Assembly: GCF_000315625.1 (NCBI RefSeq)
Contig: NW_005434666.1
Coordinates: 62,001 to 126,000, forward strand
Source of the DNA: Guillardia theta CCMP2712
Lineage: Eukaryota > Protista > Cryptophyta
Reading direction: 5' to 3'
Length of the DNA stretch: 64,000 nucleotides
Translations under genes and position numbers: made by a program
Notes under the pieces: model-generated
What the model was told of the DNA's origin: nothing
Database searches by the model: none
What the model saw: only the letters and a program-made list of their open reading frames with translations
In this document: piece by piece, positions 33,078-37,200 of the stretch
Position numbering within the stretch: position 1 is the stretch's first letter
Layout of the letters: each line of letters starts with the position of its first letter

Positions 33078-33741
33078 AAAATCCTCCTGTTCTTCCTCCT
33101 CCTCCTCCTCCTCCTCCTCTACCCAACCCTTTTTCATCTTCGCCGTCTTCCCCCTCTTCTTCACTTTGTCTGTCTTCCTTCCCTTCCTGCGCTACTTTTC
33201 CTGCTCATGGCGTCTGCAGAGCCTTAAGGTTGAGAAACCGAAGCCAGACAAGACCAACATCGCTGTTCTCAACCCCAAGTACAAGTCGGTCGGCATGTGG
33301 GAGGCAGTTGGGGCGACCAGGGGTGTACGAAAGAAGGTTATTGCCCCCTCCGCCTCCTCCTCCCGCCCTCCCTCCCTCCCCCCCCTTCCCTTCCATCATT
33401 TCCATCATCGTCGCCGCGATGAGGAGCACCAGCAGCAGCACAACTTCTACTGCGATCACCAACATTATCCCACCTGAGCATGTCTGCACTGATTCAAACT
33501 CAAACGCACTGATGCAGAAGTGTGTCGATTCTCGACCTCTCCCTACATGTTTCCACAGCTACTTCGAGCTTCTTGTCTGTGTCTGCTGCTCACTGTTTGC
33601 GTGTTCTAGTTGGCTCAGACCAAGCAGCTGCGGGACGAGAAGGAGGAGGAGGAGCGTGATGAGGGAGGGGAAGGAGACTTGTTCCAAGAGTCGAGCCAGC
33701 CAGGGAGAAGAACGGCTTCATCCGCTGTACCTGTGCCGTAG
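30739..33741 (+). CDS. multi-exon protein with N-terminal SAM-like domain
   Basis: Spliced LYRWNMAELVDFF...|LEESEIDGSIM|EMTL...ALK|VDALVVRKIRRK|LDEM resembles the SAM consensus; start and end approximate. Confidence 0.5.
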
Positions 33742-36246
33742 AGACTCCGGAGGCTCCTCCTCCATGATACTCGGGTTGGCTTGTAAATATTCTTTGATGG
33801 TTGTCTTCCTGTCCCACAGGAACGTGTTCACCAGGAAATCCTCTTTCACCTCCTCCCCTGCCCTCCAAATGTCACCATCACACCAGAATTTAACTCGCTC
33901 CTACCGGCCTTAGAGCAGGCGAGCACGCAGTGCCGTAAGTATACCCGACAAGGCAGGATCTCACCCTGTTGTATCCGTCAACCCTTCTACTCCGAAGCTA
34001 TCCTTCCTTGCCCCTTCCCCGTGCCCCCCTCCTCATGCACAGCATCTTTCCTTCTCATCCTTCTCATCCTTGTCCTGCTCCTCCTCTCCATCCTCCCCTC
34101 CTTGTCATTTGCTGCTCCATCCCTTCCTCGCTGACCTGCCAGTTCCAGATAGTGGAGAGTCCGTAGCTGCCGTACCTGAAGGCAAAATGAGTATGCCGTC
34201 CCCTTCCCTCTGATCCCTCCACCTTTCTACCCTTCTCTTCTCCTCGCTCTCCCCATCTCCTCTGGTCCCCTTCTCTTCCCCTCTCGTCCCCTTTCCTCCT
34301 CTACTCACTCCTCGCAAACTCTCACCTCCCACGTAGCCTAACTCCCTCTCTTCTTTCCTCTCCTCCCAGGAGCTTCCCTTCCTCGATCTTGACTTGATAC
34401 AACCAATCTTGCTATACGCTTCATCCATTCCCTGTCCTCTAAATCATCTCCACACCTTTCTTCAAAGTTCTTCCTCCCATGCTTAGCAATGTATTCATCG
34501 TCTGTTCCTGCGCTGCGTTGTGCTCATCTCACATCATAGCAGCTGCCAGGAAGCAACAAACCAGCACAGAAGCCCTTCCTGCACCTTCGACCCGTCGAGC
34601 TCCTGCCGCCCTCTGTCAGCTTCAACTCCCTCCCTACACATCCGCATGCCAACCTCAATCGGAGCCAGCGCAATGAAGAACTCCTCCTCCCGCTCGTGGT
34701 ATGCTTGCAGCTCCTCTGCCCGGTCGCCGTCACTCCCCGCCGTCTCCTCATGCTCTCACCTGACGGGATGTCGAACGCGGCGACAAGAAAGTTGCCATCG
34801 GGACAGGGCTAGAGTACACAAGAGCTCGTCACATTATGAACATCATATTCACCTCCACGTGCACAACAACATCTTCATCGTTGCGAGGGAGATTTCTCGC
34901 CACGTTCTTCCTCTCACCTCAACAGAGAGGCTTGCAAATTCACGTGTGTCTTTTCGTGCAATGTTCCTCTGAAAGAAAATGCTTGCCGGATGCCGCATAA
35001 CCCTCTTGTATCCTCGCAGACTGGGAACACGTTAGAACTATCGTCTCTATCTCCGTGTCTATCTCCATCTCTATCTCCATCATCCTACCCTCTTCCTCCC
35101 TTCTTGTTCCCCTTCGTCATCATTACTTTCTCATCACAATCGAAACTACCACCACAATAACACAATGACAATGACAATGACAATCACAATCACAATCACA
35201 ATCACAATCACAATCACAATCATTGATACACCCATCATCCTCCTCGTCTCGATCACCGCGCTAATCTGAAATTCTGGAGGTTAGGGAAGGAGGAGCGAGC
35301 CGACGCCTCGCTGAGCAGCGACCCGAACCCGATGATGGGCTGACGTGCCGCATCCTTGGAGAGCGTCAAACAAAAGTACGAGACGAACATCAGGGGATGA
35401 TATGGGGAGCAGAGCAACAGGAGAAGGGAGGAAGCAGGAGGAACGAAGGAGACGAGCGCGTGATAGCTGGTAAAAGTTTCTCACTGGCTTCTCCAATCCA
35501 TGGATAAGAAAATCAGTGATCTTTTCTTGCAGGAGCAACCGATTCTGCATACCCACCATGTAGCCCCTCCTTGCCTCCTCCTCACGTTCCTTCCCCAGTT
35601 TGCTCGCAAACATGTCGAGAAGTTTCATGAAACACTCTTCTCCCGTTCCAAACAGAAACTCGGGGTGACCTTGCAAGGTGAGAATATGATCCCCTATCCT
35701 CATCCCTTCACACCCGCACCACTCGCTCTTCCCCATCGACAGAGCTCCAGGAGGCATCTCACTGACGAAGTCACCGTGAGAGAACAGCAGCCCAAGTTTG
35801 TTGTTATCCATCTTCAACGTCTTCCTTCCTTCAGCGCTCAGATCAAACTCTCTCAACCCGAAGTAGAGGCCATTCCGATGCGCTTCTACCTTACCCCCGA
35901 GGGCCACGGCAACAATCTGGTGCCCAAAACAAATCCCGAGTATCTTCTTCTTCATCTGATGGAGAGCTCTGATGTACTGGCACAGATTTTCGATCCATGC
36001 TTCCCTGTCGTATGCTGAGCTGAGACTCCCTGAGATGATGAAGGCGTCGAAGTTCTCTGCCGGAGGAAGAACCAGTTCTCGCACTGCAAACTCCTCGATC
36101 GAGAATGGATCTCTGCTCTCCTCCCCCTGCTTTCCCTTGTCCCCTGCTAGCGTATGAGCAGAGAGGAGGAGAGGAACAATCATCCTTCCCACGTGCTCGC
36201 CGTAGGCGCCATCGTCACACCGCAGGACCGCAGTCCGAAGCACCAT
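33718..36246 (-). CDS. class I glutamine amidotransferase-like (gamma-glutamyl peptidase type) domain fused to a gamma-glutamylcyclotransferase-like domain
   Basis: GATase: IISGS, LGICFGHQ, SHGD, QGHPEF; after a phase-0 intron: IIGFGSLLSEASARSSFPNLQNFRLAR|LRGYKRVMRHPASIFFQRNIA..SLSVE|PC..EREEEF..|EILPCRVYLRHCVLA..|DFLVNTFLWDRKTTIKEYL..IMEEEPPESLRHRYSG*; splice phases consistent. Confidence 0.88.
35160..35225. repeat. intronic (caatga/caatca)n microsatellite
   Basis: Visible in the sequence. Confidence 0.9.
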
Positions 36247-36589
36247 GTTGACGCACAAGGGGACGCAAAGGAGGAGAGGAAAAAAAAGGTAAGAAAAATG
36301 CTAAGGACCGGTCCATGAACATGGAAAGGAGGGATGGGGTAGGGGTGGGTCAAATCTTGTAAAACTAAACAAAATTGTCGAGGTGTAAAGGACACGCTAG
36401 AAGAGGGGATGAAGGGGGTGATATAAGGAGCAGGGTATCTGCATAGCGAGGGGGGGGTGGGGTAGGTATGAACATACCCAAGTCAAAGTGGTGGGTACTA
36501 GTTAGACTCAGCTAGGGGTGGTATCTATATGAGGAGGGACTTGAGGGAGGTAGAGGACATCGACTTGGGGTGGGGTGGTACCACGTGCT

Positions 36590-37200
36590 ATGGTTTCGGT
36601 GCTTGATGAGCTCAGGGCGACGCTGGAGGCGATGAAGGCGCGAGGAGGAGCGGCAGGGGAACGAGTGCCAGCATCCACACAGAAGGCTGCAGAAGAGCTC
36701 CTCTCTTGCCTCAGGTATGCCCTTGCATGCCCTCTGGTTGCAAACAGTCTGCTCCTGTGAAGGGGAGCAGCGTCCTCTTGACTGTAAGCGTGAAGGTTGG
36801 CACCTTGTGGACTTTGTCCCAGTTCTTCGTTCATGTTTATGTGTCCTCGTCTTTGTTCGCGTGGGTGTTCTGTGCAATGATTCAGCGATGTGATGATCAG
36901 CATTGTTTTCATCCGCCATTTGCATGTGTTTGTGTATTGCCTGATTGTTTTGCCAAGGCGAGATGCAGGGCTGGTTCAGTCCCAGTCTTCAGGGCCAGCT
37001 ATTCACTATGGCATGAACTATGTTGATGGTGGAAATTCAAGCACCCGAGCGCACAACAGCACGGGCATCCTTCCATACAATGATGGGGGAGCAGGTTGTG
37101 CGAGAGGCCTGACGGTTCACTTTTGACTGGTCGCTGATTTGTGTTGCAGCGGCACATTACGCCAAGTTGAGAGCGGGAGGGTCCGGTCAGCATGCAGTTT
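36590..37200 (+). CDS. hypothetical protein (5' exon MVSVLDELRATLEAMKARGG...)
   Basis: ATG-led helical exon ending at a GT donor; remainder uncertain. Confidence 0.3.

What the first reader, a model, noticed from the sequence alone, without database searches (positions are those of the whole stretch)
33718..36246. Rosetta-stone fusion: gamma-glutamyl-peptidase-type GATase plus an uncharacterised GGCT-like domain
Seen: the GATase domain (Cys-His-Glu triad in GICFGHQ/GHPE) has no stop at its natural end. A phase-0 donor after ...GLEKP splices to an exon IIGFGSLLS..., and the following small exons give a complete second domain ending MEEEPPESLRHRYSG* at 33718. The ORF track misses most of this domain. 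Established: stand-alone class I GATases of this type include gamma-glutamyl peptidases, and (F/Y)GSL is the N-terminal motif of the gamma-glutamylcyclotransferase/ChaC fold. From memory, the second domain resembles a conserved stand-alone plant/algal protein of unknown function. Inference: the fusion links that family to glutathione or gamma-glutamyl-conjugate turnover.
Basis: partly seen in the sequence, partly recalled or inferred. Interest (0 to 1): 0.72.

Follow-up and report, generated by a model that had tools for sequence, protein, structure and literature searches.

The report
Amidotransferase fused to cyclotransferase-fold domain
The cryptophyte alga Guillardia theta makes one spliced mRNA that joins a gamma-glutamyl-peptidase-like cysteine hydrolase to a member of a widespread, unstudied protein family with the gamma-glutamyl-cyclotransferase fold, which points that orphan family (also in plants, diatoms and oomycetes) towards gamma-glutamyl or glutathione breakdown.

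Summary
RNA-derived contigs from three studies show one minus-strand transcript of 10 exons. All nine introns are GT..AG, and the CDS is 1413 nt (470 aa) running from 36246 to 33718. The first intron (35484-35355) joins the GATase exon in frame to the exon carrying GFGSLLS.

The N-domain is a class I GATase / peptidase C26. Its closest solved relative is Arabidopsis GGP1, and the triad is C106/H194/E196. It is not in the plant GGP1 clade, and GGP1's glycine-binding R206 aligns to Met.

The C-domain belongs to a large eukaryotic family of stand-alone proteins, about 216-290 aa, in oomycetes, diatoms, haptophytes, green algae and plants. This family has no Pfam or NCBIfam model and no sequence match in the PDB. 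A 69%-identical fused orthologue folds confidently (pLDDT 94.5) into the GGCT fold: Z 14.5 to human GGCT and 12.3 to ChaC2.

The same fusion occurs elsewhere: as one uninterrupted 490-aa ORF in a marine metagenome, within a single exon of another alga, and in two truncated sequences (P0123, P0126). The fused GATases form one clade, probably cryptophytes.

Function is inferred, not shown: a two-headed gamma-glutamyl-bond-cleaving enzyme. The domain architecture appears undescribed. The joined protein was never built or searched. No earlier scan note covers this gene.

The parts
35485..36246 (-). Exon 1 (CDS part, 254 aa): the complete class I GATase / peptidase C26 domain. There is no N-terminal extension.
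   Evidence: Pfam PF00117 at 3.4e-16 and PF07722 at 7e-5. The best PDB match is GGP1 9k7i at 6.4e-21. RNA contigs cover it up to 36264.
35929..35931 (-). Codon of Cys106, the nucleophile in GICFGHQ.
   Evidence: It aligns to GGP1 C100 (chain residue 110). The triad is defined in PMC12958103.
35659..35667 (-). Codons His194-Pro-Glu196 (GHPE), the rest of the triad.
   Evidence: They align to GGP1 H192/E194.
35355..35484 (-). Intron 1 (130 nt, GT..AG, phase 0), which sits at the domain boundary.
   Evidence: The joint 35353/35484 is present in X1, X2 and X3 at full contig depth. Its ends were checked.
35257..35354 (-). Exon 2: start of the GGCT-fold domain, with the GFGSLLS motif at 35330-35310.
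   Evidence: It is 25/30 identical to P0277. The motif is invariant in 68 family members.
34918..35020 (-). Exon 3 (LRGYKRVMRHPASIFF...SLSVE).
   Evidence: The invariant R37, H41, F46, S61 and L62 are kept.
34760..34808 (-). Exon 4.
34654..34715 (-). Exon 5, carrying the EREEEF acidic motif (34695-34678). This is the candidate site of the catalytic Glu.
   Evidence: R105, E106-E108 and F109 are at least 90% conserved. Equivalence to GGCT E98 is an inference.
34562..34602 (-). Exon 6 (ends in the invariant Cys130).
34456..34512 (-). Exon 7. A minor isoform uses a downstream donor at 34325 and runs into a stop.
   Evidence: The joint 34173/34454 is the main one and 34173/34324 the minor one. The premature stop was shown.
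34136..34175 (-). Exon 8.
33905..33965 (-). Exon 9, with the PCRVYLRHC motif (33953-33927).
   Evidence: P168, C169, Y172, R174 and H175 are invariant.
33718..33857 (-). Exon 10 (CDS part), ending ...RHRYSG plus TGA. The 3' UTR continues to about 33346-33600.
   Evidence: It is 26/44 identical to the C-terminus of P0277.

Best explanation
This is one nuclear gene of Guillardia theta for a 470-aa, probably cytosolic, two-domain enzyme.

Shown:
- The transcript is spliced so that a class I GATase / peptidase C26 domain continues in frame into a 216-aa domain. The GATase domain is GGP-like, with the triad Cys106-His194-Glu196.
- The second domain belongs to a large orphan family of eukaryotic stand-alone proteins.
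- By structure prediction on a close fused orthologue, that family has the gamma-glutamyl-cyclotransferase (GGCT/ChaC/AIG2) fold.
- The fusion is conserved in several related algae.

Inferred:
- The N-domain hydrolyses a gamma-glutamyl amide bond through a Cys thioester and releases glutamate. The substrate could be a gamma-glutamyl peptide or amine, a glutathione-like compound, or glutamine itself.
- The C-domain binds the free gamma-glutamyl end of a substrate with its GFGSLL loop. It uses a glutamate of the EREEEF motif to cyclise the substrate to 5-oxoproline.
- The protein would therefore be a two-headed gamma-glutamyl-bond-cleaving enzyme in glutathione or gamma-glutamyl-compound turnover.
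- The predicted compact packing of the two domains suggests that they work on one substrate pool, or on related ones, rather than as beads on a string.
- By Rosetta-stone logic, the stand-alone family in plants, diatoms and oomycetes would act in the same pathway as GGP-like amidotransferases.
For: - Spliced fusion: nine GT..AG joints in contigs from three studies, including one 1799-nt contig across all of them. The reading frame is intact over 470 codons.
- N-domain: PF00117 and PF07722. GGP1 is the best solved relative, with the triad and the S1 Gln aligned.
- C-domain family: at least 990 relatives in oomycetes, diatoms, Prymnesium, Ulva, Drosera and Brassica.
- Guillardia's copy looks functional: its exons are collinear with the family and keep all 24 invariant columns and 38 of 42 near-invariant columns (the split codons come).
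- Fold: AF2 pLDDT 94.5, pTM 0.91. Foldseek's top rows are all GGCT-fold proteins, down to E 6.6e-7. VIA-align gives Z 14.5, rmsd 2.7 A over 156 of 169 residues of human GGCT. Z then falls from 7 to about 3 once the GGCT-fold rows end. Atlas structural neighbours agree.
- Motif logic: the GxGSLL loop lies directly after strand 1, and the acidic motif lies between a helix and a strand. This matches the YGSL motif and catalytic Glu of CHAC1 and GGCT (secondary structure; PMC12756093).
- Conservation of the fusion: P0277 is a single 490-aa ORF on Tara contigs. P0271 has the junction within one exon. P0123 and P0126 are also fused. The fused GATases form one clade.
- Compact architecture: the full-length AF2 model of P0277 has pLDDT 91.6 and pTM 0.88, with an ordered linker.
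Against: - No enzymatic evidence of any kind exists.
- Both domains would need a free N-terminal gamma-glutamyl group, so a sequential reaction on one substrate is not obvious.
- The N-domain is not in the plant GGP1 clade. GGP1's R206, required for glutathione hydrolysis, aligns to Met212, although that part of the alignment is less reliable.
- The C-domain matches no GGCT, ChaC or AIG2 sequence model even at E 10. Profile comparisons with Guillardia's own PF13772 and PF06094 genes were insignificant.
- The equivalence of E106 to the catalytic Glu was not checked on coordinates.
- The family has invariant Cys and His residues (H41, C130, C169, H175, and C176 near-invariant) that no known GGCT enzyme needs. 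They may mean a different chemistry or a metal site.
- The fold and interface evidence comes from an orthologue, not from the Guillardia protein itself.
- The controlled interface test did not run.
Confidence: 0.6

Rival explanations
1. The GGCT-fold domain is not a cyclotransferase. It would be a binding, regulatory or scaffolding module, or an enzyme with a different, perhaps metal- or thiol-dependent, chemistry that acts on or controls the GATase domain.
For: - GGCT-like folds are used without cyclotransferase activity in the Paulinella crTP part 2 and in the allophanate hydrolase C-domain. Both are among the structural hits.
- The family has invariant His and Cys residues (H41, C130, C169, H175) that are absent from known GGCT enzymes.
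- No sequence model of GGCT, ChaC or AIG2 matches the family.
- The model predicts compact packing against the GATase domain.
Against: The two hallmarks of the active site, the GxGSL loop and the acidic motif after the helix, are invariant or nearly invariant across 68 divergent members. The best structural match is the enzyme GGCT itself, over almost its whole length.
Confidence: 0.22
2. The N-domain is a true glutamine amidotransferase subunit, a glutaminase that delivers ammonia. The GGCT-fold domain would be its acceptor or synthase partner, making a new kind of amidotransferase.
For: - Class I GATase domains are classically fused to their synthase partner.
- The closest bacterial models are 'glutamine amidotransferase' equivalogs, all below cut-off.
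- R206 of GGP1 is not conserved.
- The two-domain model is compact.
Against: No GGCT-fold protein is known to use ammonia or to activate an acceptor, and no nucleotide-binding motif was seen. The nearest solved relative by far is the peptidase GGP1 (E 6e-21, against 8e-10 for GMP synthase subunits).
Confidence: 0.1
3. These are two separate genes, or a read-through artefact: a stand-alone GATase plus an independent GGCT-like gene starting at the in-frame ATG near 35390 in intron 1.
For: - An in-frame ATG exists at 35390-35388.
- The Hanusia and Geminigera transcript models of the orthologous GATase end at, or diverge exactly at, the junction.
- Guillardia also has stand-alone paralogues of the C-domain.
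Against: - The exon 1 to exon 2 joint is present at full contig depth in three studies, and intron 1 has no coverage.
- Orthologues carry both domains in one uninterrupted ORF or exon of genomic DNA.
- The fused GATases form one clade.
Confidence: 0.03

Closest known systems
Arabidopsis gamma-glutamyl peptidase 1 (GGP1; PDB 9K7I/9K7J; peptidase C26, class I GATase)
   Same: It is the best solved sequence match to the N-domain (E 6.4e-21). The Cys-His-Glu triad and the S1 Gln (Q104 to Q110) align. It is a stand-alone-type GATase that cleaves the gamma-glutamyl bond of glutathione and its conjugates (PMC9804317, PMC12958103).
   Different: Identity is roughly 35% over the aligned core. The fused GATases form a separate clade from plant GGP1. 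R206 (the P2' Gly contact) aligns to Met and C154 (the redox partner) to Ser. GGP1 has no second domain.
Human gamma-glutamyl cyclotransferase (GGCT, C7orf24; PDB 3CRY/2RBH/2I5T)
   Same: It is the best structural match to the C-domain model: Z 14.5, rmsd 2.7 A, 156 of 169 residues aligned. A glycine-rich xGSx loop follows strand 1, and an acidic residue follows the helix that precedes a strand.
   Different: Identity is only 10-12%. Pfam PF13772 and PF06094 give no hit. The algal/plant family is about 40 residues longer and has invariant His and Cys residues and a conserved C-terminal ...PP..L..RYxG tail that GGCT lacks.
ChaC/CHAC1/CHAC2 glutathione-specific gamma-glutamylcyclotransferases (PDB 6K95, 6KY0, 5HWK)
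   Same: Same fold (Z 10-12). The logic of the YGSL-type motif and catalytic Glu is the same (PMC12756093). They carry out cytosolic glutathione degradation, which is the pathway the fusion suggests.
   Different: PF04752 gives no hit, and the structural score is lower than to GGCT. Whether the family acts on glutathione is unknown.
Allophanate hydrolase / urea amidolyase (PDB 4ISS, 5I8I)
   Same: This is a precedent for the architecture: an N-terminal amide hydrolase fused to a C-terminal GGCT-like-fold domain. Its C-domain is a structural hit (Z 7.4).
   Different: Its N-domain is an amidase-signature enzyme, not a class I GATase. The substrate is allophanate, and the structural similarity is weaker.
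Stand-alone orphan family (e.g. Phytophthora P0272, 216 aa; Ulva P0291; Drosera P0284; diatom and haptophyte members). UniRef's automatic name is 'Gamma-glutamylcyclotransferase AIG2-like domain-containing protein'.
   Same: This is the family the C-domain belongs to. It aligns collinearly over its full length at 45-69% identity, with all invariant residues shared.
   Different: These proteins lack the GATase domain. Some carry N-terminal extensions that look like targeting peptides. None has been characterised, as far as the paper searches show.

Membership tests
Class I glutamine amidotransferase / peptidase C26 (GGP-like) | The sequence matches the family models above their curated cut-offs. 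| tested here: met
   PF00117 scores 59.9 bits (cut-off 22.8) and PF07722 scores 23.1 bits (cut-off 20.5).
Class I glutamine amidotransferase / peptidase C26 (GGP-like) | Cys-His-Glu catalytic triad. | tested here: met
   C106, H194 and E196 align to GGP1 C100, H192 and E194 (residues named in PMC12958103). The Cys, His and Gln of GxCxGHQ are invariant and the HPE residues at least 90% conserved in A4.
Plant gamma-glutamyl peptidase GGP1 (glutathione-degrading) | Arg206, which binds the Gly carboxylate of glutathione. The R206A mutant loses most of its activity. | tested here: not met
   In the pairwise alignment, R206 (chain residue 216) aligns to Met212. The region follows a 4-residue gap, so the alignment there is less certain.
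Plant gamma-glutamyl peptidase GGP1 (glutathione-degrading) | Groups with the plant GGP clade in a tree. | tested here: not met
   In the quick maximum-likelihood tree of 104 GATases, the fused proteins form their own clade. Plant GGP1 lies elsewhere, inside a large and mostly unlabelled group.
GGCT-like fold superfamily (GGCT, ChaC, GGACT/AIG2) | The three-dimensional fold. | tested here: met
   This was tested on the fused orthologue P0277:262-490, which is 69% identical to the Guillardia exons. pLDDT is 94.5. Foldseek E is 6.6e-7. Z is 14.5, 12.3 and 11.6 to GGCT, ChaC2 and yeast ChaC.
GGCT-like fold superfamily (GGCT, ChaC, GGACT/AIG2) | A YGSL-type substrate-binding loop directly after strand 1. 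| tested here: met
   G-[FLI]-G-S-L-L-S is invariant in 68 sequences and lies directly after strand 2-7 of the model. It is present in Guillardia exon 2.
GGCT-like fold superfamily (GGCT, ChaC, GGACT/AIG2) | A catalytic glutamate (GGCT E98, CHAC1 E115). | tested here: inconclusive
   E106, E107 and E108 are at least 90% conserved and sit between helix 96-105 and strand 110-117, as expected from the topology. No residue-level superposition was possible because the tools do not return coordinates.
Pfam GGACT (PF06094), ChaC (PF04752), AIG2_2 (PF13772) | The sequence matches the family HMM. | tested here: not met
   Five family members gave no hit at E up to 10. The locus did not appear in genome-wide scans with PF13772 and PF06094; PF04752 was not scanned that way. 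The A2 profile finds nothing in the PDB, and NCBIfam gives no hit.
Orphan stand-alone family (oomycete, diatom, plant; no Pfam model) | Full-length collinear alignment with all invariant residues. | tested here: met
   Exons 2-10 align in order to P0277 and P0272. All 24 invariant columns are kept, and 38 of 42 near-invariant columns once split codons are counted. The A2 profile hits exons 2, 3, 9 and 10 in the genome scan.
GGCT-like enzymes | Release of 5-oxoproline from a gamma-glutamyl substrate. | not testable with these tools
   This needs a biochemical assay.

The most novel reading that the evidence does not exclude
The orphan GGCT-fold family would be the dedicated partner of GGP-like amidotransferases. 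It has no Pfam model, is conserved from oomycetes and diatoms to land plants, and carries an invariant His/Cys set on top of the GGCT active-site motifs. In cryptophytes the two would have fused into one compact enzyme with two gamma-glutamyl active sites. Together they would form a so-far unrecognised route of glutathione, gamma-glutamyl-compound or glutamine breakdown. The chemistry might differ from that of classical cyclotransferases, for example by depending on a metal or a thiol.
Probability: 0.2. Interest if true: 0.75.

Novelty: new variant of a known kind. Interest (0 to 1): 0.55.

Why it matters
Cytosolic glutathione breakdown in plants is currently explained by two enzyme types, ChaC-like cyclotransferases and GGP peptidases (PMC9804317). 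This gene welds a GGP-like domain to a third, uncharacterised branch of the cyclotransferase fold. That branch also exists as a stand-alone protein in land plants, green algae, diatoms, haptophytes and oomycete pathogens, and it has no family model or literature.

The fusion gives the orphan family a concrete, testable hypothesis: a substrate class, a readout (glutamate against 5-oxoproline) and residues to mutate. It also shows that the apparent public model of the Guillardia gene is badly truncated. Nothing here bears on harm or safety. It is ordinary metabolism.

Tried and rejected
- **Exon-wise searches.** Exons 2, 3 and 10 gave nothing in Pfam, and exons 2 and 3 gave nothing in the PDB. 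They are too short. Exons 2 and 3 searched singly against the genome found only themselves. The family profile later found two paralogues.
- **Genome-wide Pfam scans.** PF13772 and PF06094 did not hit this locus.
- **Profile comparisons.** hhalign of the family profile against Guillardia's own PF13772 and PF06094 genes was insignificant. The first did line up GFGSLLS with AFGSNLS.
- **Family profile against PDB sequences.** No hit.
- **Interface test.** That is no verdict and no evidence either way.
- **Raw RNA reads.** X17 put too few reads on the gene to use.
- **Hanusia (P0001), Geminigera (P0421) and P0412.** These run into, or end at, what looks like the unspliced junction. They neither support nor refute the fusion in those species.
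- **Public model look-up.** The look-up of P0121 was withheld.
- **Paper searches.** Neither the fusion nor the orphan family turned up.
- **Joined protein.** All fold and family evidence comes from single exons by reference and from database orthologues.
Full report
**Organism and locus.** Earlier notes on this window name the genome as the cryptophyte Guillardia theta. This fits the best database match of exon 1, a Hanusia phi transcript at 78% identity. The window is G000:C8:62001-126000. The gene lies on the minus strand between 36246 and 33718.

- The sequence shows an ATG at 36246 and a GATase-like open frame that does not stop at the end of the domain. A GT follows directly after ...GLEKP at 35484.
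- I laid four public runs on 33300-36800. Three sets of Logan contigs (X1, X2, X3), from three studies and two organism labels, skip nine stretches. Each skipped stretch is bounded by CT..AC on the plus strand, which is GT..AG on the minus strand.
- DNA cannot skip introns, so these contigs derive from spliced RNA, even though the run type is only guessed.
- One X3 contig of 1799 nt runs from 36264 to 33346 through all nine joints.
- The first joint removes 35355-35484. So the acceptor near 35355 is the one used, not the one near 35340.
- A phase check on each exon separately gives 10 exons and nine GT..AG introns of 44-280 nt. The exons total 1413 nt, 470 codons plus TGA, with no in-frame stop.
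- Depth in the bin that contains intron 1 equals what its 38 exon bases alone would give in X1 and X2, and about that in X3. So there is no sign of a transcript starting at the in-frame ATG at 35390.
- A minor isoform uses a donor 130 nt further downstream in exon 7 and runs into a stop.
- The raw-read RNA run X17 put too few reads on the gene to add anything.

**The joined step was left out.** As the operators required, I never built, searched or folded the joined 470-aa protein. Everything below rests on single exons given by reference and on orthologues returned by the databases.

**N-terminal domain.**
- Exon 1 (254 aa) matches Pfam GATase (PF00117, 3.4e-16) and Peptidase_C26.
- Its best solved relative is Arabidopsis gamma-glutamyl peptidase 1 (9k7i, 6.4e-21). 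That is far ahead of the GMP synthase glutaminase subunits (8e-10).
- The GGP1 structure paper (PMC12958103) defines the key residues. By the alignment, the triad C100/H192/E194 corresponds to C106/H194/E196 here, the S1 residue Q104 to Q110, and S68 to S74.
- R206 recognises the glycine of glutathione, and its loss nearly abolishes glutathione hydrolysis. It aligns to Met212. C154 aligns to Ser.
- In a quick maximum-likelihood tree of 104 related GATases, the fused proteins form their own clade. The clade has SH-aLRT 83, and its inner nodes 97-99. Plant GGP1 sits elsewhere.
- The domain is therefore GGP-like in mechanism. It is not an orthologue of GGP1, and its substrate is open.
- There is no N-terminal extension. 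The Met aligns with the start of the domain in the relatives, so a cytosolic location is likely. This is an inference.

**Finding the C-terminal domain's relatives.**
- The exons are too short for family or PDB searches.
- A full-library search with exon 1 returned P0123, an MMETSP transcript of 349 aa. Its GATase is only 40% identical to Guillardia's, but it continues into a sequence 90% identical to exon 2 and 60% identical to exon 3.
- Searching with that tail gave two full-length fusions, P0271 (497 aa) and P0277 (490 aa, ending ...HRYSG). It also gave stand-alone proteins of about 216-290 aa from Phytophthora, Drosera, Ulva and unlabelled eukaryotic contigs.
- A profile search found at least 990 relatives. 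They include Pythium, Saprolegnia, Aphanomyces, diatoms (Nitzschia, Cylindrotheca, Mediolabrus), Prymnesium and Brassica.
- None carries a precomputed Pfam domain. Direct scans find no Pfam or NCBIfam family even at E 10. The family profile finds no PDB sequence.
- UniRef's automatic name for some members is 'Gamma-glutamylcyclotransferase AIG2-like domain-containing protein'. ESM Atlas clusters of the family are labelled 'hypothetical protein'.
- The Guillardia exons 2-10 align in order along P0277 and P0272, at 69% identity to P0277. They keep all 24 invariant columns of a 68-sequence alignment, and 38 of 42 near-invariant columns once the two split codons are counted.
- The Guillardia domain is thus an intact member of this family.

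**Fold.**
- AlphaFold2 on P0277:262-490 with the 68-sequence alignment gave mean pLDDT 94.5 and pTM 0.91.
- Foldseek against the PDB puts only GGCT-fold proteins on top. These are human GGCT (E 6.6e-7), ChaC2, yeast ChaC, the AIG2-like At5g39720, YkqA, the allophanate hydrolase C-domain and GGACT.
- VIA-align gives Z 14.5 to human GGCT, with rmsd 2.7 A over 156 of 169 residues. It gives 12.3 to ChaC2, 12.2 to YkqA and 11.6 to yeast ChaC. After the last GGCT-fold row (Z 7.0) the list falls to about 3.
- The Atlas shape search finds the family's own plant clusters at TM 0.88, then bacterial and chordate GGCT clusters at about 0.6.
- The invariant G-x-G-S-L-L-S follows strand 1. The near-invariant R-E-E-E-F lies between a helix and a strand. 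In CHAC1 and GGCT these positions hold the YGSL loop and the catalytic glutamate (PMC12756093).
- I could not verify the residue-level overlay, because the tools return no coordinates.
- The family also has invariant H41, C130, P168-C169 and Y-L-R-H175(-C176). No known GGCT enzyme has these, and I cannot explain them.

**Is the fusion conserved?**
- P0277 is one uninterrupted 490-aa ORF on Tara Oceans and other marine metagenome contigs of about 61% GC.
- In L020 (P0271), both domains and their junction lie in a single exon. Only the last 32 residues follow an intron of about 270 nt, and the neighbouring gene encodes a PsbP protein.
- P0126 (276 aa) also ends in ...GFGSLLSEG.
- Every member of the fused-GATase clade whose sequence reaches past the linker is fused.
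- The only labelled members are the cryptophytes Guillardia, Hanusia and Geminigera. The Hanusia and Geminigera transcript models stop or diverge exactly at the junction, where Guillardia has intron 1. This looks like intron retention in those assemblies, but I cannot show it. The fusion may be a cryptophyte invention.
- Guillardia also has two stand-alone paralogues of the C-domain, at C29:582134-582998 and C25:8408-8983. The second is divergent and lacks the Cys/His motif. Guillardia has no close second copy of the GATase.

**Architecture.**
- A full-length AF2 model of P0277 has mean pLDDT 91.6 and pTM 0.88 over 490 residues. Its linker scores 82-93.
- A pTM that high for two domains of about 250 and 230 residues implies a confidently predicted fixed arrangement.
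- This is a prediction without a control. The controlled pair test was not run by the tool.

**Mechanism.**
- Shown: one mRNA, an intact triad, an intact orphan-family domain, the GGCT fold, and conserved fusion.
- Inferred: the N-domain cleaves a gamma-glutamyl amide through a thioester and releases glutamate. The C-domain cyclises a gamma-glutamyl substrate to 5-oxoproline.
- Both reactions need a free gamma-glutamyl end, so I favour two heads working on one pool of related substrates rather than a strict two-step relay.
- Candidate substrates are glutathione, gamma-Glu-Cys, gamma-glutamyl amino acids or amines, conjugates, and even glutamine, which is itself a gamma-glutamyl amide.
- Rivals: a non-catalytic C-domain or one with different chemistry; a true amidotransferase with the GGCT fold as acceptor domain; and two separate genes, which is largely refuted.

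**Novelty.**
- Both folds are known, and automatic annotation already flags the stand-alone family as GGCT-like.
- What appears new is the GATase-plus-GGCT-fold architecture and the functional lead it gives for an orphan family that lacks any curated model. Paper searches found nothing on either.
- The closest architectural precedent is allophanate hydrolase, an amidase with a GGCT-like C-domain.
- The only identical protein in the databases is a 134-aa fragment from an NCBI record on a 1.19-Mb contig (P0121). The public gene model for this locus therefore seems to miss most of the gene. I could not inspect that record.

Noticed in passing
window 35656-36057 (P0121): The only 100%-identical database protein is a 134-aa fragment (residues 64-197 of exon 1) from an NCBI record on a 1,194,225-nt contig. 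The public gene model of this locus seems to cover under a third of the 470-aa protein and none of the second domain.
   Followed up: partly
window 34326-34455: A minor isoform uses a donor 130 nt downstream of the main exon 7 donor (joint 34173/34324). Its depth is about a third of the main form in X1 and X2, and it is absent in X3. It adds 38 codons and then a stop, so it is probably unproductive.
   Followed up: yes
window 35160-35235 (intron 2): There is a hexanucleotide microsatellite, (GATTGT)n changing to (CATTGT)n, inside the 236-nt intron 2. One X3 contig shows a small rearranged joint here (35196/35162).
   Followed up: no
G000:C29:582134-582998 (+) and G000:C25:8408-8983 (-); loci L011, L012: These are two stand-alone paralogues of the GGCT-fold family in the same genome. 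The C29 copy is orthodox (…YLRHC…, ends …SRFNG) and has several exons. The C25 copy is a 234-aa ORF without introns that has lost the PC/RHC cysteines and most of the EREEEF motif.
   Followed up: partly
P0001 (Hanusia phi), P0421 (Geminigera cryophila), P0412: Transcript or contig models of the orthologous GATase in other cryptophytes stop or change to unrelated sequence exactly at the domain junction, where Guillardia has intron 1. This may be retained introns in the assemblies or a real GATase-only isoform.
   Followed up: partly
window 36253: One X1 contig carries 21 unmatched letters upstream of 36253 with no AG acceptor in the genome at that point. The X3 contig runs on collinearly to 36264. 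It is probably an assembly or adapter artefact, not a leader exon.
   Followed up: partly
window 36576-36800: A much more highly expressed neighbour (contig depths up to about 680) begins about 310 nt upstream of this gene. It has a splice-like loose end at 36715. I did not identify it.
   Followed up: no
family alignment A2 (P0277:262-490 numbering H41, C130, C169, H175, C176): The family has an invariant or near-invariant His/Cys set that known GGCT, ChaC and GGACT enzymes lack. It could be a metal site or a different catalytic apparatus. Spatial clustering could not be checked without coordinates.
   Followed up: no
P0294 (Brassica cretica, 435 aa): This plant member scores about 1.5 times as high as single-domain members against the family profile (534 against about 350 bits). 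This suggests a tandem duplication or a merged gene model.
   Followed up: no
window 33858-34759: Four of the nine introns are only 44-51 nt long, alongside others of 109-280 nt. That is a wide size range within one gene.
   Followed up: no
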